From positions 124,001 to 188,000 of the IMG/VR virus record IMGVR_UViG_3300023174_000036: 64,000 nt of DNA. One strand, written 5' to 3'. The position numbers and the translations under genes are program-made. Positions 17,263 through 32,982 of this stretch are shown one piece after another. The notes beneath the pieces were generated by a model. It had not been told where the DNA came from. It ran no database searches and saw nothing but the letters and a program-made list of their open reading frames with translations. Each line of letters begins with the position of its first letter. The first letter of the stretch is position 1.

Positions 17263-17642
17263 TCCTGTTCTTTTGCCATTTTTGCTATTGTAGCACGTTC
17301 TTCTTTGTTTCGCCTAGCATTTTGAAACTCTTCAACATCTGTAATAGCACTTTTCAAAGTTTCTGCATAGTTAAGAGCTTGTTGTTTACTTAGATGTACT
17401 GAAGATTCAGTATCGATATAACCTTTGGTCAATAATGTCCAAATATGATACCATCGTGTTTTACTCCAATAATTTGTTTTGCCTGTAGTATAAATGGTCA
17501 CAACAATATCGCAATCATCTGCTTCTACCCACATGTTATGATTGTGATTTTCGTCATGACAATTACAAGCAATTCGGTAGACTTTACTGTCACCCCAATC
17601 GTTTGTTTTCATAATGCCTTCGGCCGGCACTTGTATTTTCAT
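17253..17642 (-). CDS. hypothetical protein
   Basis: 129 aa ORF coupled to queE. Confidence 0.6.
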   Translation of the reverse strand: MKIQVPAEGIMKTNDWGDSKVYRIACNCHDENHNHNMWVEADDCDIVVTIYTTGKTNYWSKTRWYHIWTLLTKGYIDTESSVHLSKQQALNYAETLKSAITDVEEFQNARRNKEERATIAKMAKEQDCV

Positions 17643-17953
17643 CGTAGTGACTCCAACATTGAAATTTTAGCAATCTTTTCGCCAAAGTCTTCGTCTTTAC
17701 CAATAATGTATACCTGGCGATCATTACGATCAGTTTTAGGATCATAACGATTAAATTCTACAACTTTACCACCGACTGCACTATACACTTTAAATTGAAG
17801 TGTGGGTTCGCTGTCAATGCCTGAGCGTGTGCTAGCGGTATTCATACCGCGACTCAATTTAGGAGTTGGATAACAATCTTCTTCACGAGCCTGACCAGCG
17901 TTTTCCCAATCTTCTCGCACCCACTTGACTATCATTCTTTTAAACCATTTCAT
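17639..17953 (-). CDS. hypothetical protein
   Basis: ATGA-coupled ORF. Confidence 0.6.
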   Translation of the reverse strand: MKWFKRMIVKWVREDWENAGQAREEDCYPTPKLSRGMNTASTRSGIDSEPTLQFKVYSAVGGKVVEFNRYDPKTDRNDRQVYIIGKDEDFGEKIAKISMLESLR

Positions 17954-18144
17954 AATGACATGATCCTTTCTATTACTTTCTTCGCATCAGCAAATTCACC
18001 ACGATCCAACCTAGCTTCAATTTGAATTTCGTATTCTTCGCGAAGGTGTCTAAGATAAGGACGCATTTGGTAAGTGGCATACGGTTGCGTCCACTTAATA
18101 GTATAAAGATATTTTGGATTCATTCTACATCCTCTTCGAACCAT
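17950..18144 (-). CDS. hypothetical protein
   Basis: Small ORF, probable start MNPKY at 18123. Confidence 0.5.
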   Translation of the reverse strand: MVRRGCRMNPKYLYTIKWTQPYATYQMRPYLRHLREEYEIQIEARLDRGEFADAKKVIERIMSL

Positions 18145-18338
18145 TCGTCTACCATTTCTTCTGCTTCCGCTTGCGTAAGTGCAGGCACAAATAATCGAGC
18201 AGGTTGTCCTATTGTATGTTGTATATTAAATCTAACAATACCACCAGGTATGCTATTAAAATCTCGTTCAACTACAAACTCTTTTAGATTTTTTGCACGA
18301 TGTATTAATTGATTAGTTAAATCTTGGGCTGTTGTCAT
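18120..18338 (-). CDS. hypothetical protein
   Basis: ATGA-coupled to folE. Confidence 0.55.
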   Translation of the reverse strand: MTTAQDLTNQLIHRAKNLKEFVVERDFNSIPGGIVRFNIQHTIGQPARLFVPALTQAEAEEMVDEWFEEDVE

Positions 18339-19171
18339 CTTGGGGCAAACTCCTGTTGCATTTTAATATTGTCAAAAAATTCTTTCTTCGCTCCAGGGTC
18401 AGTCTTAAATGTACCTTGTAGCACCGTAGTCTGTGTAAGACTTGAGTGTGCCATAATTCCACGATTCTCACAACACCCATGTATAGCCTGAATATATACG
18501 CCTAAGTTTTCAGCGCCTGTGGCTTTTTGGATCTCTCTAGCAATGTCATTACAAAGTTCCTCCTGGAGAGTACCTCTACGGGCACACCACTGGGCGATAC
18601 GTGTGTACTTGCTGAGTCCGATGAGTTTCTCAGCCGCAATAATACCAATATAAGCAACGCCAGTAACGGGTTGGTGATGATGGCTACACATACTGCGAAG
18701 CTCGCTACGAACAACCAGCATACCTTCGTAGCGATCCTTCGTATCGTTTGGAAATGCTGTTGCGTCTGGTGCTGGTTCATATCTACCTGCCATTATTTCA
18801 TTAAAGTACATCTTGGCAAGTCTACGTGCTGTGCCTTTTGAGTTTGGATCGTTTTCTCGATCAATAAGCAATCGATCGAGCACTAGTTCAAATGCTTCTG
18901 TTGCCTCGTCAATTAGTTTTTCTTTATCGCCTTCGTGAAGATAATCACTGATATTATCTCCAGCCCAAAACCGTTTTTTATCGCGTTTCATTTTAAAACG
19001 AAGATGATCGCCGAGGTATGCTTCTTGATATCCGCCATCTCCAGCCATAGCGTCTAGTGCTGTTTCTTTTTTAATATATACAGGCTTACCTAGTGGCTCG
19101 TATTTGTCCTCAATAAATTCTCGACCATCGGGGGCGTTCATTACCGGATCTGTTTTAAATTCTCTAGTCAT
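18335..19171 (-). CDS. folE: GTP cyclohydrolase I
   Basis: SMCSHHHQP, IGLSKY.RI, QEEL, HGCCENRG. Confidence 0.93.
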   Translation of the reverse strand: MTREFKTDPVMNAPDGREFIEDKYEPLGKPVYIKKETALDAMAGDGGYQEAYLGDHLRFKMKRDKKRFWAGDNISDYLHEGDKEKLIDEATEAFELVLDRLLIDRENDPNSKGTARRLAKMYFNEIMAGRYEPAPDATAFPNDTKDRYEGMLVVRSELRSMCSHHHQPVTGVAYIGIIAAEKLIGLSKYTRIAQWCARRGTLQEELCNDIAREIQKATGAENLGVYIQAIHGCCENRGIMAHSSLTQTTVLQGTFKTDPGAKKEFFDNIKMQQEFAPR

Positions 19172-19189
19172 TATTACTCCTATGTTTGT

Positions 19190-19218
19190 ATTATATAGGT
19201 TTATTTAGGTTTTTGCAA
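19190..19218 (-). promoter_or_regulatory. sigma70-type promoter for folE operon
   Basis: TTGCAA-17-TATAAT then AGGAG RBS. Confidence 0.65.
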
Positions 19219-19416
19219 GATATTTTCTGCTCGAAGTTTTCGACATTGTTCCTTAACTTCTAACGGAAAGTCCGGACTAATCTCTGATATTGAACAGTTA
19301 TACGCTATCACATCGCCTTTTTTTGGAAGTGATAAAAATATTATCGGAATTGCTATTAAAAATGCAACAGCAACTACGGCTATTTCTACAGTCTCTCGCT
19401 TAGTAAAATTCTGCAT
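19201..19416 (-). CDS. small membrane protein
   Basis: Single hydrophobic segment IAVVAVAFLIAIPIIFLSL. Confidence 0.5.
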   Translation of the reverse strand: MQNFTKRETVEIAVVAVAFLIAIPIIFLSLPKKGDVIAYNCSISEISPDFPLEVKEQCRKLRAENILQKPK

Positions 19417-19589
19417 AAGTCAGCATCCTTTTCGTTTTTAAAATTAAAAAACATAGCATCATGTTTTGGATGAGTTGAATATCTTTCACCAGGCAATCCG
19501 AATACTTCTAACACAATAGCACAGGTTTCATTCCACCAAAATCCATTTTGGTTATCCCATACTACGGAGACTGTATTTTCCGTAATCAC
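19386..19589 (-). CDS. hypothetical protein
   Basis: Small coupled ORF. Confidence 0.5.
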   Translation of the reverse strand: MITENTVSVVWDNQNGFWWNETCAIVLEVFGLPGERYSTHPKHDAMFFNFKNEKDADLCRILLSERL

Positions 19590-19786
19590 TCAGCCCGCCC
19601 GCTGGTGCAACTGTCATTCCACAATTCTTGTGCTTGTTTTTTATATTCATTTAATTCGTAGTCGTGTTTGGCTGTTTGATATTGCTCTTCGGTTAGCCCG
19701 TGCCAACCACAGCACTTGCCTGTTGGACTACGCCCACAACCGCATTTGCCAAACTCTTCTGGATTTTCTTTAACTCTTATTTGCAT
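19586..19786 (-). CDS. CDGSH-like Fe-S/Zn-binding small protein
   Basis: CGCGRSPTGKCCGWH resembles CxCxxS...CDGSH; start moved to MQIRV at 19786. Confidence 0.5.
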   Translation of the reverse strand: MQIRVKENPEEFGKCGCGRSPTGKCCGWHGLTEEQYQTAKHDYELNEYKKQAQELWNDSCTSGRAE

Positions 19787-20153
19787 TTTTATAGTTTCCT
19801 TTTTCTGGTATAACATGTCTAACTCCTCCACGGGGATCTTGCATATCTCCCTTACGTCTTGGAATCATATGAACGTGTGGATACATTACTGTTTGACCAG
19901 CAGCCTCGCCACAGTTTTGTCCGACATTGAAAGCGTCCCACTTGCCTGATTCGACACCCATGTAGCCAAATTTGTATGCGGCTTTGTAGCAGTCCCAGAG
20001 ATGGTCCCAGTCTTCTTTGGTAGGCACAAAAAGCAAATGTCCTTCTGTGACAGGGTATGCATCTCGAAAGACCCAATAGTCTTTAGTTCGGTATTCAATA
20101 CCGGTCCACGGTGCTCTGTTTTCATCAAGTGCTCTTTCAAGATCTGTCGCCAT
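19770..20153 (-). CDS. HIT family hydrolase
   Basis: YPVTEGHLLFVP, NCGEAAGQTVMYPHVHMIPR histidine-triad motif. Confidence 0.9.
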   Translation of the reverse strand: MATDLERALDENRAPWTGIEYRTKDYWVFRDAYPVTEGHLLFVPTKEDWDHLWDCYKAAYKFGYMGVESGKWDAFNVGQNCGEAAGQTVMYPHVHMIPRRKGDMQDPRGGVRHVIPEKGNYKNANKS

Positions 20154-20322
20154 GGGTCATTGAGTTAAGTTGGTCTTCTAAATATTTTTTATATTCTGTT
20201 AATGCTTCAACTTTGCGCGGACTAGAGCCGTCTGCTTGCAATTTTTTAATATCGTTTTCAACTATATCAATCTTAGTTTGAAAATCAGCAATCAATATTT
20301 CTGGTGGAGTTGGATTTGCCAT
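20137..20322 (-). CDS. hypothetical protein
   Basis: AAGGA RBS, coiled-coil-like. Confidence 0.55.
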   Translation of the reverse strand: MANPTPPEILIADFQTKIDIVENDIKKLQADGSSPRKVEALTEYKKYLEDQLNSMTHGDRS

Positions 20323-20331
20323 ATTATTCCT

Positions 20332-20592
20332 TTACTTGTTTGTACCAATTCGTAAGCCTGTTATGCTTCCAAATAGTAAGAAAAATGCACACCATGTTTC
20401 TACTGTTAATGGTATCTGCAACACAGGAAATAGTGTGTTTAAGCTCCATATTCCTACAATGGGGCCAAACACAACAACAATCACAATTAGTGCAATGCCT
20501 AAAATTAATTTAATAAATGCTGATGTCATAACCAAAAATCCTCCCAAGGATAAACTAACCAACAATCTTCTTCTGCTTTGTTTACAGTCCAT
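20332..20592 (-). CDS. small membrane protein
   Basis: Two hydrophobic segments; likely start MTSAFIK. Confidence 0.55.
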   Translation of the reverse strand: MDCKQSRRRLLVSLSLGGFLVMTSAFIKLILGIALIVIVVVFGPIVGIWSLNTLFPVLQIPLTVETWCAFFLLFGSITGLRIGTNK

Positions 20593-21017
20593 ACATAATA
20601 GTCTGGATCTTTAAACTGACTTGATTGATTGTGTGTTAAAACTGCAAACCGAACATTATCTCCCCAGATGCCTTCCCATTTAGGATCGTCGGAAAAACAA
20701 CCACTTGGCCAATCTTGTTTAATCCAATTAACAGTGGATCCTTGATCGTTAATATCATCGACTATAAGAATCTTTTTACCGTTAAATGCATCTTCGGCCA
20801 TACCCAAATTACTAACACAATCGCCGCCGTCTCGAAGACTAACATCTAAACTGTTCATTTTAGTGCCAGTATATTGACTAAGCAAATTAGCAGGAACAAG
20901 TCCACCTCTAGTAATGCCTACTATATAATCCGGACGCCAATAATGAACGTGCATCTGCCTAGCAATTTCTAAACATGCACCTTCTACTTGTTGCCAAGTA
21001 TAATGAATTTTTTTCAC
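20526..21017 (-). CDS. type I phosphoribosyltransferase
   Basis: IVGITRGGLVPA, ILIVDDINDQGST PRPP-binding motif, WLVYPWE. Confidence 0.9.
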   Translation of the reverse strand: MKKIHYTWQQVEGACLEIARQMHVHYWRPDYIVGITRGGLVPANLLSQYTGTKMNSLDVSLRDGGDCVSNLGMAEDAFNGKKILIVDDINDQGSTVNWIKQDWPSGCFSDDPKWEGIWGDNVRFAVLTHNQSSQFKDPDYYVWTVNKAEEDCWLVYPWEDFWL

Positions 21018-21250: not shown

Positions 21251-21663
21251 TATTCATCTCCTTTAATTGATTCGAATGTTCTATACTTACCCAATGCCGT
21301 AATGTATTCATCATACAGTTTCTTTAGCTTCGGATGCTTCTTTTCAAGTATAACATCTCTTTCAGGAATTTGCAAGACTTTTTCAATGGTGTTTAACCGT
21401 TCTTCTAAGTCTCGACCATTAATAACCATTCGACCTTTGACTTCTAATTCTGGAGGATTATTTTTGGCAACCAATACATCGGGAGTTATCCAATGTGGAT
21501 GAGCACCGGTTCCTGTAGTGGTATAAATCTGACCACTAACACCGCCAGCTGGGTAAACTGTTCCAACTGTTAGCGGAGTTGCAGGCGGAATAGCACCGTA
21601 TCCGACAGACACAGTGCTACCAACTAATCCATTACTGACGACGTTCTTCAAGGTAGTTGTCAT
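21250..21663 (-). CDS. hypothetical protein
   Basis: Thr/Gly-rich N-terminus, C-terminal HPKLKKLYDEY resembling YPGLKIAYEKF of 22053..22475. Confidence 0.6.
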   Translation of the reverse strand: MTTTLKNVVSNGLVGSTVSVGYGAIPPATPLTVGTVYPAGGVSGQIYTTTGTGAHPHWITPDVLVAKNNPPELEVKGRMVINGRDLEERLNTIEKVLQIPERDVILEKKHPKLKKLYDEYITALGKYRTFESIKGDE

Positions 21664-22087
21664 TATGAATCCATTTGTCTTTAACGAGGAATCCCCATTC
21701 TCTCGTTTGTGGACCTGGCATAAACAAGGTCCAAGGCGTTACGCCTTCTTTTAATTCAATTCGGTGATAGCTATTAGCACTACAAAATCTAAAATGTCCA
21801 GGTCCGCGCCATTTACGTATTTCGCAATTTCCACTGAGTACCCACTCATAATACCCGCCTGCTAGTATTAGTGTAAAGTACGGCCACGGATGATCGTGTA
21901 CATCACCGGGATCACCTTTGTGAAACTTGTGTAAGAACACATTGAATGGAAATGTTTTTCGATCTTTTAAAAACAAATAATAACGAGTTAACAACGGCTC
22001 GTTACACTGACGATCCATAATAACTCGTTTGCGATCATGTCGCTCTAACCAGTTAAGGCTTAGGTCTTTTATCTTTTGGAGTATCAT
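21632..22087 (-). CDS. cupin domain protein
   Basis: LHKF...HDHPWPYFTLILAGGYYE...SYHRIEL cupin motifs. Confidence 0.75.
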   Translation of the reverse strand: MILQKIKDLSLNWLERHDRKRVIMDRQCNEPLLTRYYLFLKDRKTFPFNVFLHKFHKGDPGDVHDHPWPYFTLILAGGYYEWVLSGNCEIRKWRGPGHFRFCSANSYHRIELKEGVTPWTLFMPGPQTREWGFLVKDKWIHNDNYLEERRQ

Positions 22088-22475
22088 AGTGATCTGTTAC
22101 TAGTTTATAAGTTGTTACAAATTTTTCGTAGGCTATCTTTAATCCAGGATATTCTTCACACATTTTTTCAATACGTTTAAAATCAGGAAAACAATTGACC
22201 CACTCTTCCGGAAAATTTATTGTAAACGAAGAAGTATCTATGCTAGTTATTGCACCAAGTTGTGCAGTAGTCAATCCTGCAATTTGTGTAGTAGTAATTG
22301 TTGAAATCGATGAACTACTATAATAACTAGGATAAGATACTACACAAGGATTATAACCAGTTAATGTAATAGTATCACTGTTATATGTATTGTGACAGTT
22401 TATACCACTTAAATCAATAGTGTACGTATCATTTAATGTTATCGATGAGTCCGGTTGCTGAGAAGAACTGCTCAT
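22053..22475 (-). CDS. hypothetical protein
   Basis: Ser/Thr-rich, C-terminal MCEEYPGLKIAYEKF. Confidence 0.6.
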   Translation of the reverse strand: MSSSSQQPDSSITLNDTYTIDLSGINCHNTYNSDTITLTGYNPCVVSYPSYYSSSSISTITTTQIAGLTTAQLGAITSIDTSSFTINFPEEWVNCFPDFKRIEKMCEEYPGLKIAYEKFVTTYKLVTDHYDTPKDKRPKP

Positions 22476-23541
22476 GTAATGCCTCCGTTTGTTTATGTAT
22501 AGACGGAATCATATGCGTGTAGTTATCCATATATTGGATTATCTTTGCGCATAAATTTGGTCTATATGTTGTGTAGGACTCAAAATTTTCAGTCCATTCA
22601 CTAGGATATTTAAATGTATCAAAGTACATTTCAGTATAACTAAGTCTATCAGGCACTAGTGGTATAGCATCAACTACTGCACCTTCGTAGCAACTAATGC
22701 CTAAAGTTTCTTGTAAGTTAGCACTAAACACCATCTTTGCTTCGCCTAACAAGTTATGATATTCATTTTTTGTTAGATATTGATCTTGGCAAACTACAAA
22801 TTCGTATTGTGGTAAATGAGTAGCGAGATCTCTAAAAATTTCAACTTGTTTTTCTGGAGCAATCCTGTGCGGAAATAAAATTAAGTCACGCTTAGGCATA
22901 CCCTTGTACGGTAACAAAGTATCGTGCATATATTCCATGGGCCAACCAGTACGTATAATTTTAGTATACTCGCCGGCTAGTATCTCACTCAGTTCCTCTT
23001 CATACCAGGGATTTTCTGTTTGGAACCCGCCATTAAGTAATTCCCTATGAAATAACTCAATATGAAAATTGGTAGCAAAATAGTTGTGATCAAATGCGTG
23101 GAAGAAACTTTTCTCCGCATTACGTACCCAAGGTTTGCCTCCAACAAGACGTCCTAGGAAATCTTGAGGATCATAACTGCCAGCATGCCATAAGCCATGT
23201 AAGGTCCAGTTAAAGCCTAATAGGTCCGACATATATTTCAGTTGGATCACAGTGGGGTTCCACGCATCTGTAAAGATAAAGTGATCGTCGGGACTGGTCT
23301 TGCCTTGATTGTGCTGTTCCAAGAACGCACACATTTGAGCACTCTTCCAATAGTTAGTATCGGAGAAGTTTAAGAACGCACCCGGAGTCAGTTGGCTGTT
23401 CTTCTGAACACCATCTACTTGAACCACATTAAACTTGTCGCCTAACTTGTTCTTGAGTAGTGCTGGCACATGACTGTGCCACTGTGCTGTATAGCGAGTC
23501 TCAATGGGCTCCAGTGAGAATATCCATATTGTTGATTTCAA
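22429..23541 (-). CDS. GT-B fold glycosyltransferase-like protein (TTG start)
   Basis: FPHRIAPEKQ and LQETLGISCYEG resemble GT4 nucleotide-sugar binding motifs; AGGAG RBS. Confidence 0.7.
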   Translation of the reverse strand: MKSTIWIFSLEPIETRYTAQWHSHVPALLKNKLGDKFNVVQVDGVQKNSQLTPGAFLNFSDTNYWKSAQMCAFLEQHNQGKTSPDDHFIFTDAWNPTVIQLKYMSDLLGFNWTLHGLWHAGSYDPQDFLGRLVGGKPWVRNAEKSFFHAFDHNYFATNFHIELFHRELLNGGFQTENPWYEEELSEILAGEYTKIIRTGWPMEYMHDTLLPYKGMPKRDLILFPHRIAPEKQVEIFRDLATHLPQYEFVVCQDQYLTKNEYHNLLGEAKMVFSANLQETLGISCYEGAVVDAIPLVPDRLSYTEMYFDTFKYPSEWTENFESYTTYRPNLCAKIIQYMDNYTHMIPSIHKQTEALHEQFFSATGLIDNIK

Positions 23542-23559
23542 AGTTGTCTCCTATACTAC

Positions 23560-23588
23560 ATTATATAGTAAAGTGGGGTATAGGTCAA
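23560..23588 (-). promoter_or_regulatory. sigma70-type promoter for the glycosyltransferase
   Basis: TTGACC-17-TATAAT then AGGAG. Confidence 0.75.
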
Positions 23589-23606
23589 ATATATTTTGCT
23601 CATTCT

Positions 23607-23852
23607 TCAACTCCACCTTAACGCAAACCATGTGGCCAACTTGGGATCTTTGACTGTGATGGTGGGCACATATTTTGGTGCTAGGTTAAACCCTTCAAAC
23701 GCTTCATGTCCTTGTGGATACATCCGCTCACGCTTATAGAACCAAGTATAATCGTCGCTGTCATAAATGCTGGTCATGTTGCCTCTACCAATATTTTTAT
23801 ACAACCATTCAATACACCCTTCGGGTACACCTTGTGGAAACTCTACTCTCAT
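23607..23852 (-). CDS. hypothetical protein (island cassette)
   Basis: 81 aa ORF ending in junction repeat. Confidence 0.6.
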   Translation of the reverse strand: MRVEFPQGVPEGCIEWLYKNIGRGNMTSIYDSDDYTWFYKRERMYPQGHEAFEGFNLAPKYVPTITVKDPKLATWFALRWS

Positions 23853-24160
23853 ATATTTCCTAATCCAACTCTACTATAACCTAACTTGGACTTAATCTCT
23901 TTACGGTCTCGGTTCTTCTCTGGTTTCCATGCTCTAGGATCAACAGTTTCGCCCGTTAGTTCATAACGAAAATCTGGATCGTAGACCATATAGCCTAACT
24001 TGTTCCATTTGATTACGCCCGCATCAAAAAGAAAGACGCATCCACGACACATACAAAAACTGGCACCATTATCCGACCACACATTACCATTGACTGTGCC
24101 CACATACTTCACAACTTTTCCTGTGTTCATTTCTTTAAGTGCTTCGTAGTAATCAATCAT
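23849..24160 (-). CDS. hypothetical protein (island cassette)
   Basis: 103 aa ORF starting at junction variant. Confidence 0.6.
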   Translation of the reverse strand: MIDYYEALKEMNTGKVVKYVGTVNGNVWSDNGASFCMCRGCVFLFDAGVIKWNKLGYMVYDPDFRYELTGETVDPRAWKPEKNRDRKEIKSKLGYSRVGLGNI

Positions 24161-24303
24161 TCTTGTTCCATCTTACTAAAGTCAGGATCCCGGCTGTACC
24201 CGATATTAAAGTTACCGAGTTTCCACCAAAGATAGCGTCCACCATAATCACAGGTTTGTACTGTAAATCCAAGAAACTTAAAATGTGTAGTCCATTCAAT
24301 CAT
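24157..24303 (-). CDS. 48 aa hypothetical protein (not in ORF track)
   Basis: MIEWTTHFKFLGFTVQTCDYGGRYLWWKLGNFNIGYSRDPDFSKMEQE between two junction repeats. Confidence 0.55.
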   Translation of the reverse strand: MIEWTTHFKFLGFTVQTCDYGGRYLWWKLGNFNIGYSRDPDFSKMEQE

Positions 24304-24616
24304 TCTTCACTCCTAGTAATTCTTTGATCAGGGTCTTTTTATCTTCAGTTGACATACCATCAACTCCGAAATGTTCTTTAATCCTGTCCTTGATAACTTC
24401 AGAAACATTGCCATTGATACCGTCTTCACGAGTATACCAAACCTGTTCAATACATTCTCGAACAATCAACTCGGCGAACTTTTCAAACGAATCGTTTGAA
24501 TCAAAAATCACACCGGCATCTTCTTCGTATTCTTTGCCTTCTAAATTGTTATAGTTGATCCTACGCATAAAGTCAGCACCAGCCTGTACAGCAAGTTCTC
24601 GAATTCGTTCGTTCAT
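24296..24616 (-). CDS. hypothetical protein, MNERI(R/K)ELA family
   Basis: Shares MNERI.ELA, FAELIVRECI, IKEHFGV with next ORF. Confidence 0.75.
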   Translation of the reverse strand: MNERIRELAVQAGADFMRRINYNNLEGKEYEEDAGVIFDSNDSFEKFAELIVRECIEQVWYTREDGINGNVSEVIKDRIKEHFGVDGMSTEDKKTLIKELLGVKND

Positions 24617-24828
24617 TCTTCAACTCCGAAATGTTCTTTAATCTGGTCAATACACTGAGAACCACCGTTAAGCCAAGTGTCAACTGATTTAGGGACAGGA
24701 TCACTAATAACTTGTTCACAACATCCGATACATTCCCGAACAATCAACTCGGCGAAATATTCAATAGATTCTTCATCCTTTCTTAGGAAATTAGCCTGTA
24801 AAGCAAGTTCTTTAATTCGTTCGTTCAT
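24613..24828 (-). CDS. hypothetical protein, MNERI(R/K)ELA family
   Basis: Tandem paralog of 24296..24616. Confidence 0.75.
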   Translation of the reverse strand: MNERIKELALQANFLRKDEESIEYFAELIVRECIGCCEQVISDPVPKSVDTWLNGGSQCIDQIKEHFGVEE

Positions 24829-24831
24829 TCT

Positions 24832-24990
24832 TCAACTCCCGACTGTTAATCGTTTAGTCACCTTGCTATACCTTAGCCAAACGATTTTTGATCCATAACG
24901 GAACCTAAATCCAAGGCTACTTTTATCACCGATCGGATAAAAGTTAAAACCATTGCGGATCACTCCGCCTTCCTCTGTGATATGTATCAT
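24832..24990 (-). CDS. 52 aa hypothetical protein (not in ORF track)
   Basis: MIHITEEGGVIRNGFNFYPIG...VGS; ATGA overlap with endonuclease stop, ends in junction repeat. Confidence 0.55.
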   Translation of the reverse strand: MIHITEEGGVIRNGFNFYPIGDKSSLGFRFRYGSKIVWLRYSKVTKRLTVGS

Positions 24991-25587
24991 TTCTTTTCCT
25001 TACAGTTATCAAAGTGGTATCTCTTCATACCGCTAACTCCGCCTTGTTTAGCACAGTGAGGACAAACAAGTACAGGTTGTAGTGTTCCTTTCAGCGAAGT
25101 AGAAACACCCAATCTACCAGAAGGCAATCCCTTCCTACGCTTATTTGATTCTGATATATGTGGAGCAGGACCAGTTGCCTTGCCCTTGTTCCAAGGTGTT
25201 ATACCTTTCTTATGGATAGCATTGGCTTTACTTGTACTGGGCATTTTAACTCCAGCAGGAGCACCATCTAATCCATTCTCCGGAATCATATTAGCCCATA
25301 CTTTCTTGCCACGGGAATCTACAGCATCTACTATGTTATGGAATTCACTAAAGAATGTAGCAAACTCTACCAACTGATCCATGTCAGTAAATTCTTCACA
25401 CCATACAGTTGTGATATCTTCGCTGTGTTCTTTTAAGTGTCTCAACCAATACTTACCAGAACCCAAATAGGTCTGTGGGTCCTTGGTAGTCTTGCCAAAG
25501 TATCGTAGTCCAGTGGTATTGTGTTGCTTGATATAAAGCCAGGTTGGCTTAAATTCCGGTGATGGAATATTACTATAAATATTCATG
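24987..25587 (-). mobile_element. GIY-YIG (Seg-like) homing endonuclease gene with NUMOD3-like repeats
   Basis: WLYIKQHNTTGLRYFGKT, YLGSGKYW, PWNKGK, ISESNK, C-terminal CPHC...HFDNC; likely start MNIYSN at 25587 behind AGGA. Confidence 0.8.
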
Positions 25588-25649
25588 CTGATAGTTCCTA
25601 ATAAACTGTTAGAGTCAGTGGATGTTGGTAGCATCGCGACTGGCACTTT

Positions 25650-25657
25650 TATTTATA
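25650..25657 (-). promoter_or_regulatory. canonical T4 late promoter TATAAATA driving the endonuclease
   Basis: Exact TATAAATA overlapping the stop codon of the truncated GT fragment. Confidence 0.7.
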
Positions 25658-25928
25658 CAGAACAGTTAGAAAGAATAAGACTGTCGCCGGAATGAACGGC
25701 TCCGTTACAAAATAAACGGCCCATTTGCTCAACCTGACTAGCCTTGTATATATTGGTACCACCAAAATTAAGGAAAGCACCAGGAGTAGTGGCTGTAGGA
25801 ATATCCTCAGGGCCAGAGATAATTTGAACATGGTGTCCTGCCTTTTTAAGAAGTTTAGGCACATGGGATTTCCATTGTCCCGTGTACCGTGTTTCAACAG
25901 CTTCTAGATCAATTATGAATATGTTCAT
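25653..25928 (-). pseudogene. orphan N-terminal fragment of a glycosyltransferase homologous to 22429..23541
   Basis: LEAVETRYTGQWKSHVPKLL and TPGAFLNFGGTN match LEPIETRYTAQWHSHVPALL and TPGAFLNFSDTN; frame ends after about 82 homologous residues. Confidence 0.8.
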
Positions 25929-26173
25929 TGGTTTCTGTTAACAAACGGACGATTGCCTTGATAAGGTTTTTTCTCGCCGGTCCATGCTTTCTTTGGACGC
26001 TTGCTCTTTTCGTAGTTGCGCCACACCCAACTTTCTCTATTGTACAAGTCGGCTTCGTTGTAAGGGAACAATTCAATCCTACAGAAGTTAAGAAAAGATT
26101 CTAGTTCATCGAAAATCTTAACGATATCCGGGCGAGTTTCAAAATAATTGATGTCTTTGTAATTCTTAGCCAT
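25925..26173 (-). CDS. hypothetical protein
   Basis: AAGGA RBS, ATGA-coupled to GT fragment. Confidence 0.65.
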   Translation of the reverse strand: MAKNYKDINYFETRPDIVKIFDELESFLNFCRIELFPYNEADLYNRESWVWRNYEKSKRPKKAWTGEKKPYQGNRPFVNRNQ

Positions 26174-26184
26174 TGTAGCTTTCC

Positions 26185-26589
26185 TTAGTACTTAATAAAT
26201 GAACCATTTTCTCCGTCTTCGGAGACTTCAATCCAGACCTCACGGTCTGGATACTTTTGTGAAATAGTGTCGTACAATTCGTCCGACATCATTTCGCAAC
26301 TCTTGTGATCTAGCGACAAAACACCTTGTGTGCTAGAATACAGTTGTTCAAGCCATCGCTTGAATTGTATGAATTCCACATCTCGGTCATTGTGGGTAAC
26401 ACTAAGCCATACCCTAAAATGAAAGATGTGACGATGAGGATAACCCAGAAACGATACATCATATTCATCTCCTGTAGCTAAGTTAGGGTTTGTTAATGCC
26501 GCTGGGTATTTGTGAATACCCTCCTTACGAAATGTAACCCAAATCATTTTGTTAGGGCGGATGTCTTGTTTAATAATCATTTTAGTCAA
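26185..26589 (-). CDS. QueD-like T-fold protein (DpdL-like candidate)
   Basis: FLGYPHRHIFHFRV, DVEFI.FK, SCEMM, EVSEDGENG; lacks the CxxxHGH of canonical QueD. Confidence 0.65.
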   Translation of the reverse strand: MTKMIIKQDIRPNKMIWVTFRKEGIHKYPAALTNPNLATGDEYDVSFLGYPHRHIFHFRVWLSVTHNDRDVEFIQFKRWLEQLYSSTQGVLSLDHKSCEMMSDELYDTISQKYPDREVWIEVSEDGENGSFIKY

Positions 26590-27130
26590 AGAACCTTTCT
26601 CTAGATTGAGATGTACGAGAGATGCTTATAATTTTTTTCATAGATTTAACTGGAATTCTAATCCTAACAGAATTTTCATGGCCCCAGCAATCTCCAACTA
26701 GATACTTATTAGGTCCATAAATGTCTTTAGAAGAATTGCCTTGCAATACTTGTTTGGCAATATAATTATAGTCTTGTTCAAATTTTTCTTGTATTTCGTT
26801 ATCAGTCATATCAACATTTATAGGTTCTTTAGTAATCCTAAAAATTGGATCTGTTAAAACTACTTCTTGTTTCTGAACTTTTTTATAGATATCAGTTTTA
26901 TTCCACGGCAAAGTTTTTATATTATCTATAGTTATAGAACCTTGAGAGTACGACGAATTGCTGTATATACTATGACTTTTTATTTCAGTACCTTCTGTTG
27001 GCATATCTACAGGCCCAACACGATCTATAATATTTCCTGCTTTTTCGTATGCGTCTTCGATAAATCGACCGTCAGAGCCGTCATTTCTTTTTTTTGGTAG
27101 CAGTGTTCCTGCCGGTATACGTTTAATCAT
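26582..27130 (-). CDS. PD-(D/E)XK nuclease-like protein
   Basis: GRFIE...G...GPVDM...TEIKS spacing like MutH/NaeI-type nucleases; start moved to MIKRIP at 27130. Confidence 0.45.
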   Translation of the reverse strand: MIKRIPAGTLLPKKRNDGSDGRFIEDAYEKAGNIIDRVGPVDMPTEGTEIKSHSIYSNSSYSQGSITIDNIKTLPWNKTDIYKKVQKQEVVLTDPIFRITKEPINVDMTDNEIQEKFEQDYNYIAKQVLQGNSSKDIYGPNKYLVGDCWGHENSVRIRIPVKSMKKIISISRTSQSRERFFD

Positions 27131-27666
27131 AATGTTGTATCTTGTGTGTACTGATCCCAATGAGTATACTTGTCTTTACTCATTAAGCTCTGTAGGTGAT
27201 GTGTCCACACACCTGGATTTGTAGCACCCCAAGTTCGGTCGTCCAGTTTAAGTGTGGCATTATAGTTGAGTTGATTAATGTAAGGTAACTTGACACTAAT
27301 CATAGGGACAAAGCGAGGATATTCGTTATAAGCAGATTCCAATACACCTTCAATGTGTTCAACACCGAAGTCCAATGAAACCCAATAGTCGGCTTTAAGG
27401 CAACCAATAATAACTTCATCCCACGCTTTATATTCTTCTTGCGAGATAGATTTGGGATTAAAACTTTGACTAGTGCCAAAGTAAATGTGTTTAATGCGTT
27501 TAGACTCGTCTAACAGTGCTTGAGTGTCGTCTGCCTTACGCAAAATTTCTTCAAGTGGAGGAGTGCCCACTACAAATAGTGTAAACATACCATAACAAAT
27601 AGTATGCTCGACTTCATAACCTGTAAAGTATACGACGTCTTGTCGTTCTTCAGTGTTTAGTCCCAT
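27127..27666 (-). CDS. conserved-looking hypothetical protein in modification cluster
   Basis: FTGYEVEHT, HIYFGTSQSF, KLDD...ATNPGVW. Confidence 0.65.
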   Translation of the reverse strand: MGLNTEERQDVVYFTGYEVEHTICYGMFTLFVVGTPPLEEILRKADDTQALLDESKRIKHIYFGTSQSFNPKSISQEEYKAWDEVIIGCLKADYWVSLDFGVEHIEGVLESAYNEYPRFVPMISVKLPYINQLNYNATLKLDDRTWGATNPGVWTHHLQSLMSKDKYTHWDQYTQDTTL

Positions 27667-28547
27667 TTGATATAACCTCTGCTGTAACCGTTTGGACGAT
27701 CCTTACCATCCGCAAACGCTTGTTGCCACTCTATGTTTCTATTATAACCTCTAGTCCAAAAAGAATCAACCTCAAGTTCACCGTTTTCAATCATCCAACG
27801 TGCTTGATGCATGGCTGTGATAAATCGAGACGTTCTTGGACTAGGTTTAACTGTGGTAACAGCTTTCCAAAGTTGCTGTTGTGCTTCTTCTTTGGTTACT
27901 GCTTTACCAACGGCATCTATAATTAGTGCTTCGTTATTTAGGTTAATATCTGTACCTATATCATATTTTCCTGATAAGTCCACGACAATGTCATAACTTT
28001 CACTGGTCCACAATAACAAAGTGTCTCCCCAGAGATCTATGTTATTAGATCCCAATGCGTCAACATCCATATCTGGAAAATGATGTTTTAAATTATTAAA
28101 AACAACCCAAGCAAGAAATCCGCTACCTAAGATCAAACATTTACCTTTGGATCTGCGTTCAAATTCTTCGTATGCTTGACTAACACAATTAATACCACAA
28201 GCAACTGGTTCTAAAATATATTTTGGATGTGCTTCTGGAACTTGTACATATTCATTGGCACGTACATTATAAAAGTCTGCGTATGCTGGTTCACCCCGAG
28301 TAGCAACAAAGTCGCCTTTTGCAAGACCAGTGACACCAGCACCCATTTCAATTACTTGACCCAAGCCTTCGTGTCCTTGCATACTAAGTGGCAATGGTCC
28401 AAAATTACCTTGCATCATATCAATGTCGCTACGACATACGCCTGTCATGATAGCTTGTACACGAATATCAGTAGGCCCTAGTGGAGGCAATTCATAGGTT
28501 ACTTCTTCAAAGTAACCTTGACCTGTAGTTTGCAAACAGCGTGTCAT
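27657..28547 (-). CDS. Zn-dependent alcohol dehydrogenase (MDR) family protein
   Basis: GVCRSD, GHEGLG, LEPVAC, LILGSGFL. Confidence 0.85.
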   Translation of the reverse strand: MTRCLQTTGQGYFEEVTYELPPLGPTDIRVQAIMTGVCRSDIDMMQGNFGPLPLSMQGHEGLGQVIEMGAGVTGLAKGDFVATRGEPAYADFYNVRANEYVQVPEAHPKYILEPVACGINCVSQAYEEFERRSKGKCLILGSGFLAWVVFNNLKHHFPDMDVDALGSNNIDLWGDTLLLWTSESYDIVVDLSGKYDIGTDINLNNEALIIDAVGKAVTKEEAQQQLWKAVTTVKPSPRTSRFITAMHQARWMIENGELEVDSFWTRGYNRNIEWQQAFADGKDRPNGYSRGYIKWD

Positions 28548-29428
28548 AGATTTTCGATCCTTTCATGGATCCACGAATCTTGTTTATATTGCTCAAGCCA
28601 AAAAGTCTGATTATCTATATTTTTAATAGCATCAGAAATCATATTCTGATAAGCATATTCTGGACAAAGGCCTAACTCAACAGTAATCACGCTGTCGTCT
28701 TCCATAACAAATTCGATATTTCTTTTATCAGATTTTAAATCTCGCCAATCAGCAGTTAGTTGCCATTTGTCTGTAAAATTAATTTGACAAAAATCATCTA
28801 CATCATACGTGCCATTAACATTAACAGTTCCGTAATCTGTGCCAGTCAATTGACCCAGTGTCCACCTTTTAAATGCAGTTTGCTTAGTCAAGTTAGCTCT
28901 AATCCAGTCTGGTGCCAATGCTATGAACCAACTTAACAAGTGAGGCATTAAATCTCTACTAACACCACCAAATGCCAGTTCTTTATTAGTAAACCAACTA
29001 CCTGGATTTGGTATACGATCTTTGTTAATCCAATTAAGATTAACTTTTTTAGATTTATTTGCTAAATCTTTTAGCTCAACAATGTTGTCTCGCCACATAT
29101 TATTTTTGACCATCATAAAACGTGTAAACGGTCTGGTCTTAATCATACCAGTCCAGTCGTTACTTGTTTTGAATCCTGGCTTTTCAACAAACACTATTTT
29201 AGTATAAGGTGCTACCTGTTCGGCTATGTCTTTATGCGTAAAATTTGGCGTACAAATATGTGCAGTATCAAAAATACTATATTTTCTAATAGCATCTGCA
29301 ACACTAGTAAACTCAGCACCTTTGGAAGGATCCATATCTACTGTAATAACTGTGTGCCCAATATTTTCTAGGACAGTCTTGTATAACTGTCCAATACCCA
29401 TACCGATAACGAGACTACGCTTGTTCAT
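28544..29428 (-). CDS. Gfo/Idh/MocA family oxidoreductase
   Basis: VIGMGIG Rossmann, ICTPNFTH, VEKP, GGVSRDLMPH. Confidence 0.85.
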   Translation of the reverse strand: MNKRSLVIGMGIGQLYKTVLENIGHTVITVDMDPSKGAEFTSVADAIRKYSIFDTAHICTPNFTHKDIAEQVAPYTKIVFVEKPGFKTSNDWTGMIKTRPFTRFMMVKNNMWRDNIVELKDLANKSKKVNLNWINKDRIPNPGSWFTNKELAFGGVSRDLMPHLLSWFIALAPDWIRANLTKQTAFKRWTLGQLTGTDYGTVNVNGTYDVDDFCQINFTDKWQLTADWRDLKSDKRNIEFVMEDDSVITVELGLCPEYAYQNMISDAIKNIDNQTFWLEQYKQDSWIHERIENL

Positions 29429-29660
29429 TTTTCTTTTCCTCGTAGACTCTAAACATTCGAGTCACTTCTTCCATTTGTTTTTGGAACACTTCAGGCGCAC
29501 CGATTGCCGCAATTTGCATATCATATTCGCTAGGATAGTGACGCAACATACTACGTGCTTCGTCTTTAACGGCTTTGGGAACTCGAGGAGTGGTTAAGAT
29601 CTTTAGTAAAAATCTTTGAGTCTGTACTACTGCTCGATATCTTTCGTCGGGTAAAGTCAT
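29415..29660 (-). CDS. hypothetical protein (BPSL0761-like)
   Basis: MTLPDERYRAV...EARSMLRHYP; start moved to 29660. Confidence 0.55.
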   Translation of the reverse strand: MTLPDERYRAVVQTQRFLLKILTTPRVPKAVKDEARSMLRHYPSEYDMQIAAIGAPEVFQKQMEEVTRMFRVYEEKKNEQA

Positions 29661-29697
29661 TTTATAGCTCTTTTTGTGAAAGTTTTCGCGGGTGATG

Positions 29698-32174: not shown

Positions 32175-32182
32175 ATGTTATG

Positions 32183-32211
32183 ATTATACTTAGGTTTTTT
32201 GATTATGTCAA
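32183..32211 (-). promoter_or_regulatory. perfect sigma70 promoter for clamp-dpdA operon
   Basis: TTGACA-17-TATAAT. Confidence 0.8.
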
Positions 32212-32981: not shown

Positions 32982-32982
32982 A

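What the first reader, a model, noticed from the sequence alone, without database searches (positions are those of the whole stretch)
22429..25928. Homing-endonuclease island splits the glycosyltransferase and repairs it with a foreign N-terminus and new promoter
ORF 25653..25928 is the first ~82 aa of a glycosyltransferase and stops exactly where a TATAAATA late promoter and a GIY-YIG gene begin. About 2.1 kb downstream, a complete homolog (22429..23541) starts with a divergent version of the same N-terminus, its own TTGACC-17-TATAAT promoter and a TTG start. The best reading is that an invading cassette (endonuclease, six small genes and an allele-B 5' end) recombined into allele A, giving a chimeric GT and an orphan stub. 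Free-standing Seg-type endonucleases are known to convert neighbouring genes to cleavage-resistant alleles; here the target is a putative DNA-modification enzyme, so its specificity may have changed.
Basis: partly seen in the sequence, partly recalled or inferred. Interest (0 to 1): 0.78.

Follow-up and report, generated by a model that had tools for sequence, protein, structure and literature searches.

The report
Endonuclease cassette replaces a gene's front
A selfish DNA-cutting-enzyme gene sits inside a giant lake phage's glycosyltransferase gene and keeps that gene working by carrying a substitute front end with its own promoter, which leaves the original front end as a dead stub; this trick was known from fungal mitochondria but, as far as I could find, not from phages.

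Summary
The window lies in a 356-kb freshwater jumbo-phage contig.

- **Empty-site relative.** L004 is 97-99% identical on both flanks and has one uninterrupted glycosyltransferase (GT) gene. Against it, the window carries about 2.5 kb of foreign DNA (25683 to about 23200).
- **Content of the foreign tract.** It holds a decayed scrap of GT codons 82-100, a GIY-YIG homing endonuclease, six small coupled ORFs, a sigma-70-like promoter with RBS and TTG start, and a "B-type" GT 5' module (codons 1-114).
- **Stub.** Stub codons 1-81 are base-for-base identical to L004.
- **Chimeric gene.** Residues 1-118 of the full gene are 94-96% identical to B-type genes whose C-termini are only 70-72% alike. 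Residues 121-370 are 99.2% identical to L004.
- **Recurrence.** The same stub-endonuclease-cargo-B-head layout recurs in more than 20 contigs on at least eight divergent backbones. The endonuclease is under strong purifying selection (dN/dS 0.05-0.09).
- **Controls.** No intron was found. Contigs in two independent lake metagenomes bridge both junctions exactly.
- **Not supported.** Nothing supports a role for the GT in DNA modification or a change in its specificity. Cleavage itself is inferred.
- **Closest known.** The nearest analogue is the fungal mitochondrial "mobile ORF" gene hybrid, mirrored to the other gene end.

The parts
25684..25928 (-). Native part of the orphan stub: A-type GT codons 1-81. 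Its ATG overlaps the stop of the upstream 82-aa ORF.
   Evidence: Base-for-base identical to the 5' end of the intact GT in L004. It groups with L004 in the N-terminal tree.
25653..25683 (-). Last 10 stub codons plus the stop. This is a decayed remnant of GT codons 82-100 that travels with the cassette (SLILSNCSV* in place of HFVFTDAW...).
   Evidence: Identity to L004 ends sharply at 25684/25683. The degenerate part differs among island copies, and L086 keeps the most of it (DHFVFDNVG).
25584..25664 (-). Conserved left end of the cassette, including TATAAATA (25650-25657) and the leader of the endonuclease gene.
   Evidence: Identical in five of the six island copies aligned and near-identical in L087. 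A 32-nt stretch of it has exact matches in 4 viral contigs and 18 metagenome contigs, one of which (L183) is the window's own contig. Genome-wide, 11 of 15 TATAAATA copies precede an ORF start, against 11% for controls.
24987..25583 (-). Free-standing GIY-YIG homing endonuclease gene (198 aa from the ATG; an alternative GTG start is at 25646). It has an N-terminal catalytic domain, a disordered linker and a C-terminal CxxC...H..C zinc finger.
   Evidence: The model's catalytic domain best matches the I-TevI catalytic domain (Z 7.3, rmsd 2.9 A over 81 residues), followed by other GIY-YIG nucleases. Among 37 family members, Pfam GIY-YIG hits 14 and NUMOD3 hits 15. dN/dS is 0.05-0.09. It is the only copy in the genome.
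23607..24990 (-). Six small cargo ORFs with overlapping starts and stops: 24832-24990 (52 aa), 24613-24828 (71 aa), 24296-24616 (106 aa), 24157-24303 (48 aa), 23849-24160 (103 aa) and 23607-23852 (81 aa).
   Evidence: Listed. Each has homologues in other island copies. Number and order vary between islands, from 1 to more than 9 ORFs. No Pfam or PHROG match.
23548..23588 (-). Cassette-borne expression signals for the repaired GT: TTGACC-17-TATAAT (23588-23560) and RBS AGGAG (23552-23548).
   Evidence: Best sigma-70-like site in the 6-kb region scanned, 11/12. The block is identical in the window, L007, L083 and (one base aside) L084; L006 keeps the two hexamers, RBS and start but has a different spacer, even though upstream cargo differs.
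23200..23541 (-). Foreign B-type 5' module of the GT: TTG start and codons 1-114.
   Evidence: 21-42 mismatches per 60 nt against L004. 94-96% amino-acid identity to L005, L006 and L007. It sits in the B clade, separated from the A clade by about 10 substitutions per site.
23167..23199 (-). Right crossover interval, codons 115-125, at the start of the HGLWHAGSYDP block that A and B types share at DNA level.
   Evidence: The last difference from L004 is at codon 114. Sustained divergence from L005/6/7 begins after about codon 125-130.
22429..23166 (-). Native A-lineage remainder of the GT (codons about 126-370), containing the EX7E motif.
   Evidence: 99.2% amino-acid identity to L004 and sister to L004 in the C-terminal tree. 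GT-B fold, GT4-like, Z up to 25.6.

Best explanation
What is shown is a gene-invading homing-endonuclease cassette that makes its own insertion harmless by replacement rather than by splicing.

The ancestor of this phage looked like L004. It had an operon, 192-aa ORF / 134-aa ORF / 82-aa ORF / A-type GT, with one intact GT gene.

Inferred steps:
1. During co-infection with an island-bearing relative, the GIY-YIG endonuclease cut the A-type GT in or near codons 82-100. This is the most conserved DNA stretch of A-type genes and the point where the ancestral insertion sits.
2. The break was repaired from the donor.
3. The left end recombined within the donor's own A-type stub. The crossover fell at codon 81/82.
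4. The right end found its first good homology in the block at codons 115-128, which A and B types share.

Shown result: about 2.5 kb was copied in. It contains the endonuclease gene behind a TATAAATA element, variable small-gene cargo, and a promoter-RBS-TTG unit driving a B-type copy of GT codons 1-114 fused in frame to the resident codons 115-370.

The resident 5' end is left as an untranslatable-to-function stub. The stub still sits behind the native operon signals and serves as the left homology arm for the next round of homing.

The B-type head differs from A at the putative target (HPGII becomes NPTVI, plus silent changes). It is therefore presumed resistant to cleavage.

The GT probably keeps its chemistry: it has a GT-B/GT4 fold, an EX7E motif, and all near-invariant residues conserved in both head types.
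For: Structure of the recombinant:
- Window 33922-25684 matches L004 1-8239 at 99.0%, and window 23291-15000 matches L004 8233-16500 at 97.4%. The mismatch profile shows the left boundary is sharp, and GT codons 121-370 are nearly mismatch-free (4 differences in about 750 nt).
- Residues 1-118 are 94-96% identical to L005/6/7, whose C-termini are 70-72% identical. Residues 121-370 are 99.2% identical to L004.
- The N-terminal and C-terminal trees are discordant.

Mobility:
- The same stub-endonuclease-cargo-B-head order occurs in L007, L083, L084, L086, L087 and in 17 further metagenome contigs.
- Their neighbouring 134-aa ORF is only 37-89% identical to the window's, while the endonuclease is 92-98% identical (75% in the divergent L087).
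- All six stubs fall in the A clade, next to different A-type genes.

Endonuclease identity and maintenance:
- GIY-YIG fold with I-TevI as top match. Pfam GIY-YIG and NUMOD3 hits occur in family members. dN/dS is 0.05-0.09.

Target inference:
- Codons 89-98 are the most conserved DNA in the A-type genes over the span examined (codons 70-130). They coincide with the ancestral insertion point and differ in B.

Expression signals:
- The promoter/RBS/TTG block is conserved across islands. TATAAATA is associated with gene starts across the genome.

Not an artefact, not spliced:
- Exact contigs in two independent studies bridge both junctions. RNA-library contigs show no stub-to-GT joint. No Rfam intron matches.

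Established background:
- Free-standing T4 Seg endonucleases cause co-conversion and marker exclusion (PMC2988022).
Against: - No cleavage assay exists. The cut site, and the resistance of the B head and the stub, are inferred from conservation and breakpoints only.
- Ordinary homologous recombination between co-infecting phages could yield the same product without a targeted cut.
- B-type heads also occur without a stub or endonuclease (L003, L005, L006, L170 and others). So the B module can spread, or persist, without the enzyme.
- The island is itself mosaic. The window's endonuclease is close to L083's (dS 0.14), but their B modules are far apart (dS 1.5).
- The window protein's own Pfam GIY-YIG score is below threshold (E 0.087). 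The canonical arginine is not invariant in the family alignment.
- RNA evidence comes from assembled contigs of metatranscriptomes that may contain DNA.
Confidence: 0.8

Rival explanations
1. The endonuclease is only a passenger. The island and the B-type head spread by ordinary homologous recombination between co-infecting mosaic phages. The original stub arose from one illegitimate recombination event, and the enzyme does not target the GT gene.
For: B-type heads exist without an endonuclease or stub (L003, L005, L006, L170). Another unrelated mosaic patch lies 1.2 kb downstream, at 21982-21262 relative to L004. The endonuclease and the B module have different divergence histories.
Against: The endonuclease is always immediately next to the stub, at one identical junction, in every contig that shows it. 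It is kept under strong purifying selection (dN/dS 0.05-0.09) while moving across backbones whose neighbouring 134-aa ORF is 37-89% identical. The ancestral insertion point lies in the most conserved DNA stretch of the target gene, which is the hallmark of homing sites.
Confidence: 0.15
2. This is a split or spliced gene. The stub is a 5' exon that is joined to the downstream gene by RNA splicing, trans-splicing or protein splicing.
For: The stub is an intact ORF in five of six island copies, and it lies in the same orientation as the GT.
Against: The downstream gene is complete. It has its own homologous N-terminus, promoter, RBS and start codon. No group I or group II intron model matches at E<=1. 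The intervening 2.1 kb is packed with seven ORFs. No stub-to-GT joint appears in RNA-library contigs. L087's stub carries an internal stop.
Confidence: 0.02
3. The stub is the decayed remnant of an old tandem paralogue of the GT. It is not the original 5' end of the same gene.
For: The two N-termini are only 40% identical, as old paralogues might be.
Against: None of the 71 stub- and endonuclease-free relatives among the first 80 loci has two GT copies. The stub is 100% identical to the head of L004's single GT, and the full gene's tail is 99.2% identical to the tail of that same gene. In the trees, the stub groups with L004's head and the window's tail is sister to L004's tail.
Confidence: 0.02
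4. This is an assembly chimera of co-occurring A-type and B-type strains.
For: Island-free relatives co-occur at higher depth in the same samples; a joint 23286 to 26185 appears in runs X1 and X2.
Against: Zero-mismatch contigs bridge the stub/endonuclease junction and the promoter/B-head/crossover region in two independent studies. The same architecture is assembled independently in more than 20 contigs from many samples.
Confidence: 0.01

Closest known systems
Fungal mitochondrial 'mobile ORF' (mORF) gene hybrids: Allomyces macrogynus atp6; Glomus sp. atp6, atp9, cox2 and nad3; Rhizopus atp9; Mortierella cox2 (PMC3630166)
   Same: A free-standing endonuclease ORF (GIY-YIG or LAGLIDADG) inserts into a protein gene and carries a foreign copy of the displaced gene end. 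The foreign end is the one used. The native end survives nearby as an unused duplicate that is near-identical to the close relative's gene, while the inserted end is much more divergent. Neither case involves an intron or an intein.
   Different: There the 3' end is replaced: the foreign C-terminus lies upstream of the endonuclease and is read in frame from the native promoter. Here the 5' end is replaced, so the cassette must bring its own promoter, RBS and start codon. The foreign module lies downstream of the endonuclease and of up to 9 or more cargo genes. The host is a bacteriophage, not an organelle.
Intronless homing by free-standing T4 Seg endonucleases: SegF at genes 56/69, SegG at gene 32, SegE and SegB (reviewed in PMC2988022)
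   Same: A GIY-YIG enzyme that is not inside an intron. The presumed cut is in a neighbouring conserved gene of endonuclease-less relatives. Repair copies the endonuclease gene and co-converts flanking sequence to the donor's allele. Late-type TATAAATA-like signals lie next to the endonuclease gene.
   Different: Seg genes lie between genes. Conversion replaces alleles cleanly, with no duplicated gene fragment and no new promoter for the target. Here the element lies inside the ORF, and the gene is rebuilt from a foreign head. Sequence identity of the catalytic domain model to I-TevI is only 16%.
Endonuclease insertions that split phage genes: mobE in Aeh1 nrdA, mobA in T4 gene 39/60, a seg-like insertion in gene 43 of phage 25 (PMC2988022)
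   Same: A free-standing endonuclease gene sits inside a conserved enzyme gene at a functionally critical, conserved motif. Gene function is retained without splicing.
   Different: In those cases the two halves are both translated and reassemble as subunits. Here nothing needs to reassemble: the downstream gene is full-length and the upstream piece is redundant.
Integrase-type elements that carry a replacement gene end, such as phage 21 and e14 in icd, and tRNA-gene integrators (from my own knowledge, not checked here)
   Same: The inserted element restores the disrupted gene with its own copy of the displaced end and leaves a duplicated remnant.
   Different: Those elements use site-specific recombinases and replace 3' ends. 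No integrase is present here, and the boundaries are homology-dependent crossovers.

Membership tests
GIY-YIG homing endonucleases (I-TevI / Seg type) | GIY-YIG alpha/beta catalytic fold | tested here: met
   AF2 model residues 13-101 have pLDDT of about 95. The best of 48,161 chains is the I-TevI catalytic domain 1ln0_A (Z 7.3, rmsd 2.9 A, 81 of 92 residues). Next come PD-T4-3, T4 EndoII, Slx1 and UvrC-N.
GIY-YIG homing endonucleases (I-TevI / Seg type) | Sequence signature (GIY...YIG tyrosines, Arg, Glu, Asn) recognised by the Pfam model | tested here: inconclusive
   The window protein scores E 0.087, below the Pfam cut-off. Fourteen of 37 relatives hit PF01541, best E 0.0023. Invariant residues are Y17, Y28, N98 and E102, but no arginine is invariant.
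GIY-YIG homing endonucleases (I-TevI / Seg type) | Modular DNA-binding tail (NUMOD3 repeats or zinc finger) | tested here: met
   NUMOD3 is found in 15 of 37 relatives, best E 2.7e-12. A C-terminal CxxC...H..C motif is conserved and modelled at pLDDT 82-89.
GIY-YIG homing endonucleases (I-TevI / Seg type) | Presence/absence polymorphism at one site in otherwise near-identical genomes, with co-conversion of flanks | tested here: met
   L004 compared with the window: the flanks are 97-99% identical and the donor tract spans 25683 to about 23200.
GIY-YIG homing endonucleases (I-TevI / Seg type) | Site-specific cleavage of the endonuclease-less allele | not testable with these tools
   The complex-prediction job with protein plus target DNA was not folded. 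This needs a biochemical assay.
mORF-type gene hybrid (endonuclease carrying a replacement gene end) | Endonuclease ORF plus a duplicated gene end; the foreign copy is in use, and the native copy is orphaned and near-identical to a close relative | tested here: met
   The stub is 100% identical to L004. The head in use is B-type, 41% identical to L004.
mORF-type gene hybrid (endonuclease carrying a replacement gene end) | The replaced end is the C-terminus, read through from the native gene | tested here: not met
   Here the N-terminus is replaced, and it is driven by a cassette-borne promoter, RBS and TTG start.
Group I / group II intron with an endonuclease ORF | Ribozyme core flanking the endonuclease ORF; exons joined in RNA | tested here: not met
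   No Rfam match at E<=1 in 22000-26600. No stub-to-GT joint in RNA-library contigs. The downstream gene is complete.
GT-B glycosyltransferase, GT4-like (retaining) | Two-Rossmann-domain GT-B fold | tested here: met
   The model has pLDDT 93.6 and pTM 0.90. Z is 25.6 to sucrose-phosphate synthase and 24 to MshA, BshA and GlgM.
GT-B glycosyltransferase, GT4-like (retaining) | EX7E motif in the C-terminal domain | tested here: met
   E278 to E286 (ETLGISCYE) is read directly from the translation. Both glutamates are invariant or near-invariant in the 46-sequence alignment.
GT-B glycosyltransferase, GT4-like (retaining) | Match to curated sequence models (Pfam Glycos_transf_1 and similar) | tested here: not met
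   No Pfam, NCBIfam or PHROG hit, and no PDB sequence hit.
Phage DNA glycosyltransferases (T4 alpha/beta-glucosyltransferase type) | Closest fold to T4 AGT/BGT, plus a pathway making a modifiable base (hydroxymethylase, or DpdA/TGT) | tested here: not met
   T4 enzymes are not among the top 50 structural matches. The genome has no PF00303, PF01702 or PF06508.

The most novel reading that the evidence does not exclude
This may be a distinct class of ORF-invading mobile element in phages. A free-standing homing endonuclease neutralises its insertion neither by RNA splicing nor by protein splicing. Instead it carries a promoter-equipped, cleavage-resistant replacement 5' module of the target gene. 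It re-uses the orphaned native 5' end as its left homology arm and expression leader, and it acts as a shuttle for variable small-gene cargo. Because the swapped module covers about two-thirds of the acceptor-binding domain of a GT-B enzyme, repeated homing could also diversify what the enzyme glycosylates.
Probability: 0.35. Interest if true: 0.8.

Novelty: new variant of a known kind. Interest (0 to 1): 0.66.

Why it matters
Homing endonucleases are thought to survive inside genes only by hiding in self-splicing introns or inteins, or by splitting genes whose halves can reassemble. This locus shows a third solution in a phage: bring a spare, resistant gene head with its own promoter. The evidence is unusually clean. 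There is a 97-99% identical empty-site genome, mapped crossovers, and more than 20 independent occurrences on divergent backbones.

The locus mirrors the C-terminal "gene hybrids" of fungal mitochondria. That suggests end-replacement is a general, convergent strategy of free-standing endonucleases.

It also gives three practical things:
- a concrete, testable enzyme/target pair;
- an explanation for a deep A/B dimorphism confined to the first roughly 115 codons of a core gene in a very large family of freshwater jumbo phages;
- a route by which small accessory genes hitch-hike between phages.

Tried and rejected
- **Family and sequence searches that found nothing.** Megablast of the region against GenBank phages gave no match. 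Pfam, PHROG and NCBIfam scans of the GT, the stub, the endonuclease and the small ORFs gave no hits at default sensitivity. Sequence searches of the PDB found nothing meaningful for either protein.
- **Foldseek on the endonuclease model.** It gave only insignificant hits (E>0.6), though they included Slx1 and a UPF0213 GIY-YIG protein. The VIA-align wide search was needed to resolve the fold.
- **Complex prediction.** The job with endonuclease plus an 81-bp A-type target was counted but not folded. It is no evidence either way.
- **Longer contigs for the second-order variant.** I tried to find longer contigs for the variant with a 30-codon B-type stub. Two exact-protein look-ups found nothing, and the third returned only contigs of 4.7 kb or less.
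- **DNA-modification role of the GT.** No thymidylate-synthase-type hydroxymethylase, TGT/DpdA or QueC is in the genome. The idea was dropped as unsupported.
- **TATAAATA.** I first judged it a chance match: 3 copies in the window against 5.7 expected, and rank 55 of 56 among composition-matched 8-mers genome-wide. I revised this after the positional test.
- **Rejected explanations.** Intron or splicing, tandem paralogue, assembly chimera, and deletion of the island from a window-like ancestor to give L004. The last is impossible because L004 carries A-type sequence at codons 84-114, which the window lacks.

Full report
**Setting.** The window is bases 124001-188000 of a 356-kb, about 96%-complete IMG/VR virus contig. 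The contig comes from lake water; runs holding the region are all freshwater metagenomes. All genes discussed lie on the minus strand. The GT belongs to a very large family: more than 8000 proteins in the word-indexed search and at least 598 viral contigs. More distant relatives occur in jumbo phages of Pseudomonas, Sinorhizobium, Acidovorax and Xanthomonas.

**Observation check.**
- The stub ORF is 25653-25928, 91 aa. The full GT is 22429-23541, 370 aa, with a TTG start.
- The two N-termini align at 40% identity, E 1e-17.
- The stub's stop codon lies inside TATAAATA.
- An endonuclease ORF (24987-25583/25646) and six small ORFs with overlapping starts and stops fill the 2.1-kb gap.
- The best sigma-70-like site in the 6-kb region scanned, TTGACC-17-TATAAT (11/12), sits 19 nt upstream of the TTG start, with an AGGAG between them.

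**The empty site.** Among 80 related viral loci, L004 is the key comparator.
- Window 33922-25684 matches L004 1-8239 at 99.0%. Window 23291-15000 matches L004 8233-16500 at 97.4%.
- L004 has the order 192-aa ORF, 134-aa ORF, 82-aa ORF, a single GT, then the downstream genes, with flanking proteins 94-100% identical to the window's over the adjacent genes, falling to 60% at the 137-aa ORF inside the downstream mosaic patch.
- The stub is identical to L004's GT 5' end up to 25684 and diverges abruptly at 25683.
- In the full-length gene, codons 1-120 differ from L004 at 21-42 positions per 60 nt. From codon 121 through the end of the GT and on to about window 21983 there are only 5 differences in roughly 1.2 kb.
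- The last difference from L004 is at codon 114. Sustained divergence from the B-type genes begins after codon 125-130.
- The foreign tract is therefore window 25683 to about 23200, roughly 2.5 kb.
- L004 cannot derive from the window by deletion. It carries A-type sequence at codons 84-114 that the window no longer has.

**Chimerism.**
- Residues 1-83 and 84-118 of the window GT are 94-96% identical to L005, L006 and L007, whose residues 121-370 are only 70-72% identical to the window.
- Residues 121-370 are 99.2% identical to L004, whose residues 1-83 are 41% identical.
- A maximum-likelihood tree of the first 83 residues has two clades separated by about 10 substitutions per site (support 100/100). 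The A clade has 70 rows and includes all six stubs, with the window stub joined to L004. The B clade has 12 rows and includes every island-bearing full-length gene.
- The tree of residues 125-370 has no such split. It places the window as sister to L004 (SH-aLRT 98) inside A-type diversity, and carriers of B heads are scattered.

**Recurrence and mobility.**
- The same order (134-aa ORF, 82-aa ORF, A-type stub, endonuclease, small ORFs, promoter, B-type GT) is found in L007, L083, L084, L086 and L087.
- It also occurs in every one of the 17 other metagenome contigs (plus the window's own) that share a 32-nt stretch of the cassette's left end and extend far enough to show it.
- Across these loci the 134-aa neighbour is 37-89% identical to the window's, whereas the endonuclease is 92-98% identical (75% in the divergent L087).
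- The cassette's left end is identical in five of the six island copies from the TGTTCTGTATAAATAA motif onward and near-identical in L087. Just upstream, the remnant of GT codons 82-100 is decayed differently in different copies; L086 still reads DHFVFDNVG.
- The promoter/RBS/TTG block is identical, apart from one base in L084, in four islands with different cargo; endonuclease-free L006 keeps the hexamers, RBS and start but has a different spacer.
- Cargo ranges from one to more than nine small ORFs.
- The endonuclease has dN/dS of 0.05-0.09 in seven comparisons, so it is maintained by selection.
- The island is itself mosaic. The window's endonuclease is close to L083's (dS 0.14), but their B modules are distant (dS 1.5).

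**What the proteins are.**
- *Endonuclease.* The model is confident over residues 10-105 (pLDDT about 95) and over the C-terminal zinc-finger region. An exhaustive structural comparison ranks the I-TevI catalytic domain first (Z 7.3, rmsd 2.9 A, 81 residues). Next come a GIY-YIG restriction enzyme, T4 EndoII, Slx1 and UvrC-N. Fourteen of 37 relatives give weak Pfam GIY-YIG hits and 15 of 37 give NUMOD3 hits. It is the only copy in the genome.
- *GT.* The model (pLDDT 93.6) is a GT-B fold closest to GT4 and related retaining GT-B enzymes: sucrose-phosphate synthase, MshA, BshA and GlgM, with Z 24-26. It has an EX7E motif at E278-E286.
- *Extent of the swap.* The swapped 114 codons span strands 1-4 and helices 1-3 of the N-terminal domain. 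In GT-B enzymes this domain usually binds the acceptor (established knowledge).
- *Conserved residues.* The near-invariant family residues in that span (E11, R16, Y17, W21, F56, T62, K66, Q69, D92, W94, Y103) are present in both types, as far as each can be read. Nothing here indicates altered chemistry.

**Is the GT a DNA-modification enzyme?**
- No support was found. T4 glucosyltransferases are not among the top structural matches.
- The genome lacks a thymidylate-synthase-type hydroxymethylase, TGT/DpdA and QueC.
- The neighbourhood does hold GTP cyclohydrolase I, a radical-SAM protein, a phosphoribosyltransferase, UDP-glucose dehydrogenase, two oxidoreductases and a B-family DNA polymerase. 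A PTPS/QueD homologue lies elsewhere in the genome.
- A pterin- or sugar-related acceptor is therefore at least as plausible as DNA. A tetrahydrobiopterin glucosyltransferase is among the structural matches (Z 20.5). The acceptor remains unknown.

**Promoters.**
- TATAAATA is rare in the genome: 15 copies, rank 55 of 56 among composition-matched 8-mers.
- Eleven of those 15 copies lie 10-80 nt upstream of the ATG of an ORF of at least 60 aa on the same strand. The figure for the other permutations pooled is 318 of 2817, or 11%.
- The motif thus behaves like a real promoter element. Its timing is not known.

**Splicing and artefact controls.**
- No Rfam family matches 22000-26600 at E<=1.
- In two independent DNA studies, zero-mismatch contigs span 24814-25782 or 25583-26163 (endonuclease, junction, stub) and 22300-24125 (GT, crossover, promoter, cargo).
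- One metatranscriptome holds exact contigs over the B head, the crossover and the promoter region, but none over the endonuclease or stub.
- Another metatranscriptome holds a roughly 91%-identical relative's endonuclease-plus-stub junction.
- No RNA contig joins the stub to the GT. These RNA libraries may contain DNA, so this is weak evidence.

**Mechanism.**
- *Shown:* the structure, the breakpoints, the horizontal distribution, and selection on the enzyme.
- *Inferred:* the enzyme cuts A-type GT DNA between codons about 82 and 100.
- The grounds for this are as follows. Codons 89-98 (TTTACTGAtGCTTGGCAtCCtGGtAT) are the most conserved DNA within the codon 70-130 span of the 45 distinct A-type sequences. 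The ancestral insertion point lies within them. B-type genes differ there, with HPGII replaced by NPTVI plus silent changes.
- The right crossover sits at the first long stretch that A and B share (codons 115-128). The left crossover sits at the last base of intact stub homology. Both are what double-strand-break repair from an island-bearing donor would give.
- This matches the pathway established for T4 free-standing endonucleases (PMC2988022).
- The stub then serves as the left homology arm. Because it keeps the native operon coupling (its ATG overlaps the stop of the 82-aa ORF), it probably also feeds transcription into the endonuclease gene.

**Comparison with known systems.** The nearest described arrangement is the fungal mitochondrial mORF gene hybrid. 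There, an endonuclease ORF carries a foreign C-terminal gene end, the native end is left unused, and the native end is near-identical to a sister species (PMC3630166). The present case is the mirror image: the 5' end is replaced, with its own promoter, and it is in a phage. The T4-phage review describes endonuclease insertions that split genes, and intronless homing with co-conversion, but no end replacement. Four full-text searches found no phage precedent. I therefore rate it a new variant of a known kind.

**Confidence.** The recombinant structure is essentially certain. That endonuclease-initiated homing created and spreads it is likely (about 0.8) but unproven without a cleavage assay.

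Noticed in passing
window 24296-24828; L181 1494-3953; L179, L176, L187: The 71-aa and 106-aa cargo ORFs belong to a family of small genes with conserved ends (MNERI..LA.QA ... KFAELIVREC ... HFGVEE). The stop of one overlaps the start of the next. L181 carries at least nine in tandem. Contig depth over 24444-24845 is 10-20 times the flanks in all four runs, so the family is very abundant in these lakes. The conserved ends could mediate cassette-like shuffling.
   Followed up: partly
L181 1376-1510 (also L171, L173, L176, L179, L084): A second-order stub. In several islands the B-type head is itself cut off after 30 codons (MKSTIW...PALLK, then out of register), directly behind its conserved promoter. 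It is followed by an array of the small MNERI-family genes. Contigs end before any further GT appears. Contigs with the identical endonuclease protein (L195, L197) have the intact B-type gene instead.
   Followed up: partly
window 21262-21982: A separate mosaic patch relative to L004: 5-37 mismatches per 60 nt across the 151-aa and 137-aa ORFs, between stretches of near-identity. It is an independent recombination tract 0.5 kb downstream of the GT.
   Followed up: no
window 16405-21017 and 27657-35664; genome 208587-208967: The gene neighbourhood includes a radical-SAM protein (16405-17262), GTP cyclohydrolase I (18335-19171), a xanthine/hypoxanthine-type phosphoribosyltransferase (20526-21017), two oxidoreductases (27657-29428), UDP-glucose/GDP-mannose dehydrogenase (32208-33053) and a B-family DNA polymerase (32983-35664). 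A PTPS/QueD homologue lies elsewhere. No QueC or TGT/DpdA was found, so this is an incomplete 7-deazapurine set or a pterin pathway.
   Followed up: partly
whole genome (15 sites, e.g. genome 87994+, 225592-, 309337-): TATAAATA is strongly under-represented in the genome, yet 11 of its 15 copies lie just upstream of ORF starts. This suggests a T4-late-like promoter class in this uncultivated jumbo phage.
   Followed up: partly
L087 5102-5362: The stub of the most divergent island (endonuclease 75% identical) has an internal stop and deletions. Stubs therefore decay with age. This fits the view that they are non-functional as protein.
   Followed up: no
L006 7074-8001; L170 2447-3185: B-type heads with the cassette promoter and homologues of the cargo ORFs occur without any stub or endonuclease. 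L006 keeps only the last 28 codons' worth of the 103-aa cargo ORF. These may be the ancestral donor context, or islands that lost the enzyme.
   Followed up: partly
L088-L162 (viral contigs): The endonuclease belongs to a family with at least 96 relatives in IMG/VR (39-63% identical) that sit in other genomic contexts. Their N-terminal domain is nearly invariant (TWLYIKQHN..GL.YFGKT), and their NUMOD3/zinc-finger tails are highly variable. This fits target switching by tail exchange.
   Followed up: no
window 22053-22475: The 140-aa ORF downstream overlaps the last 47 nt of the GT. It is Ser/Thr-rich with a weak ALTTAQ-repeat match (E 0.004). It is 99% identical in L004 but only 35-37% identical in the B-head/island loci L003 and L087 and about 75% in the A-type relatives L008 and L021.
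   Followed up: no
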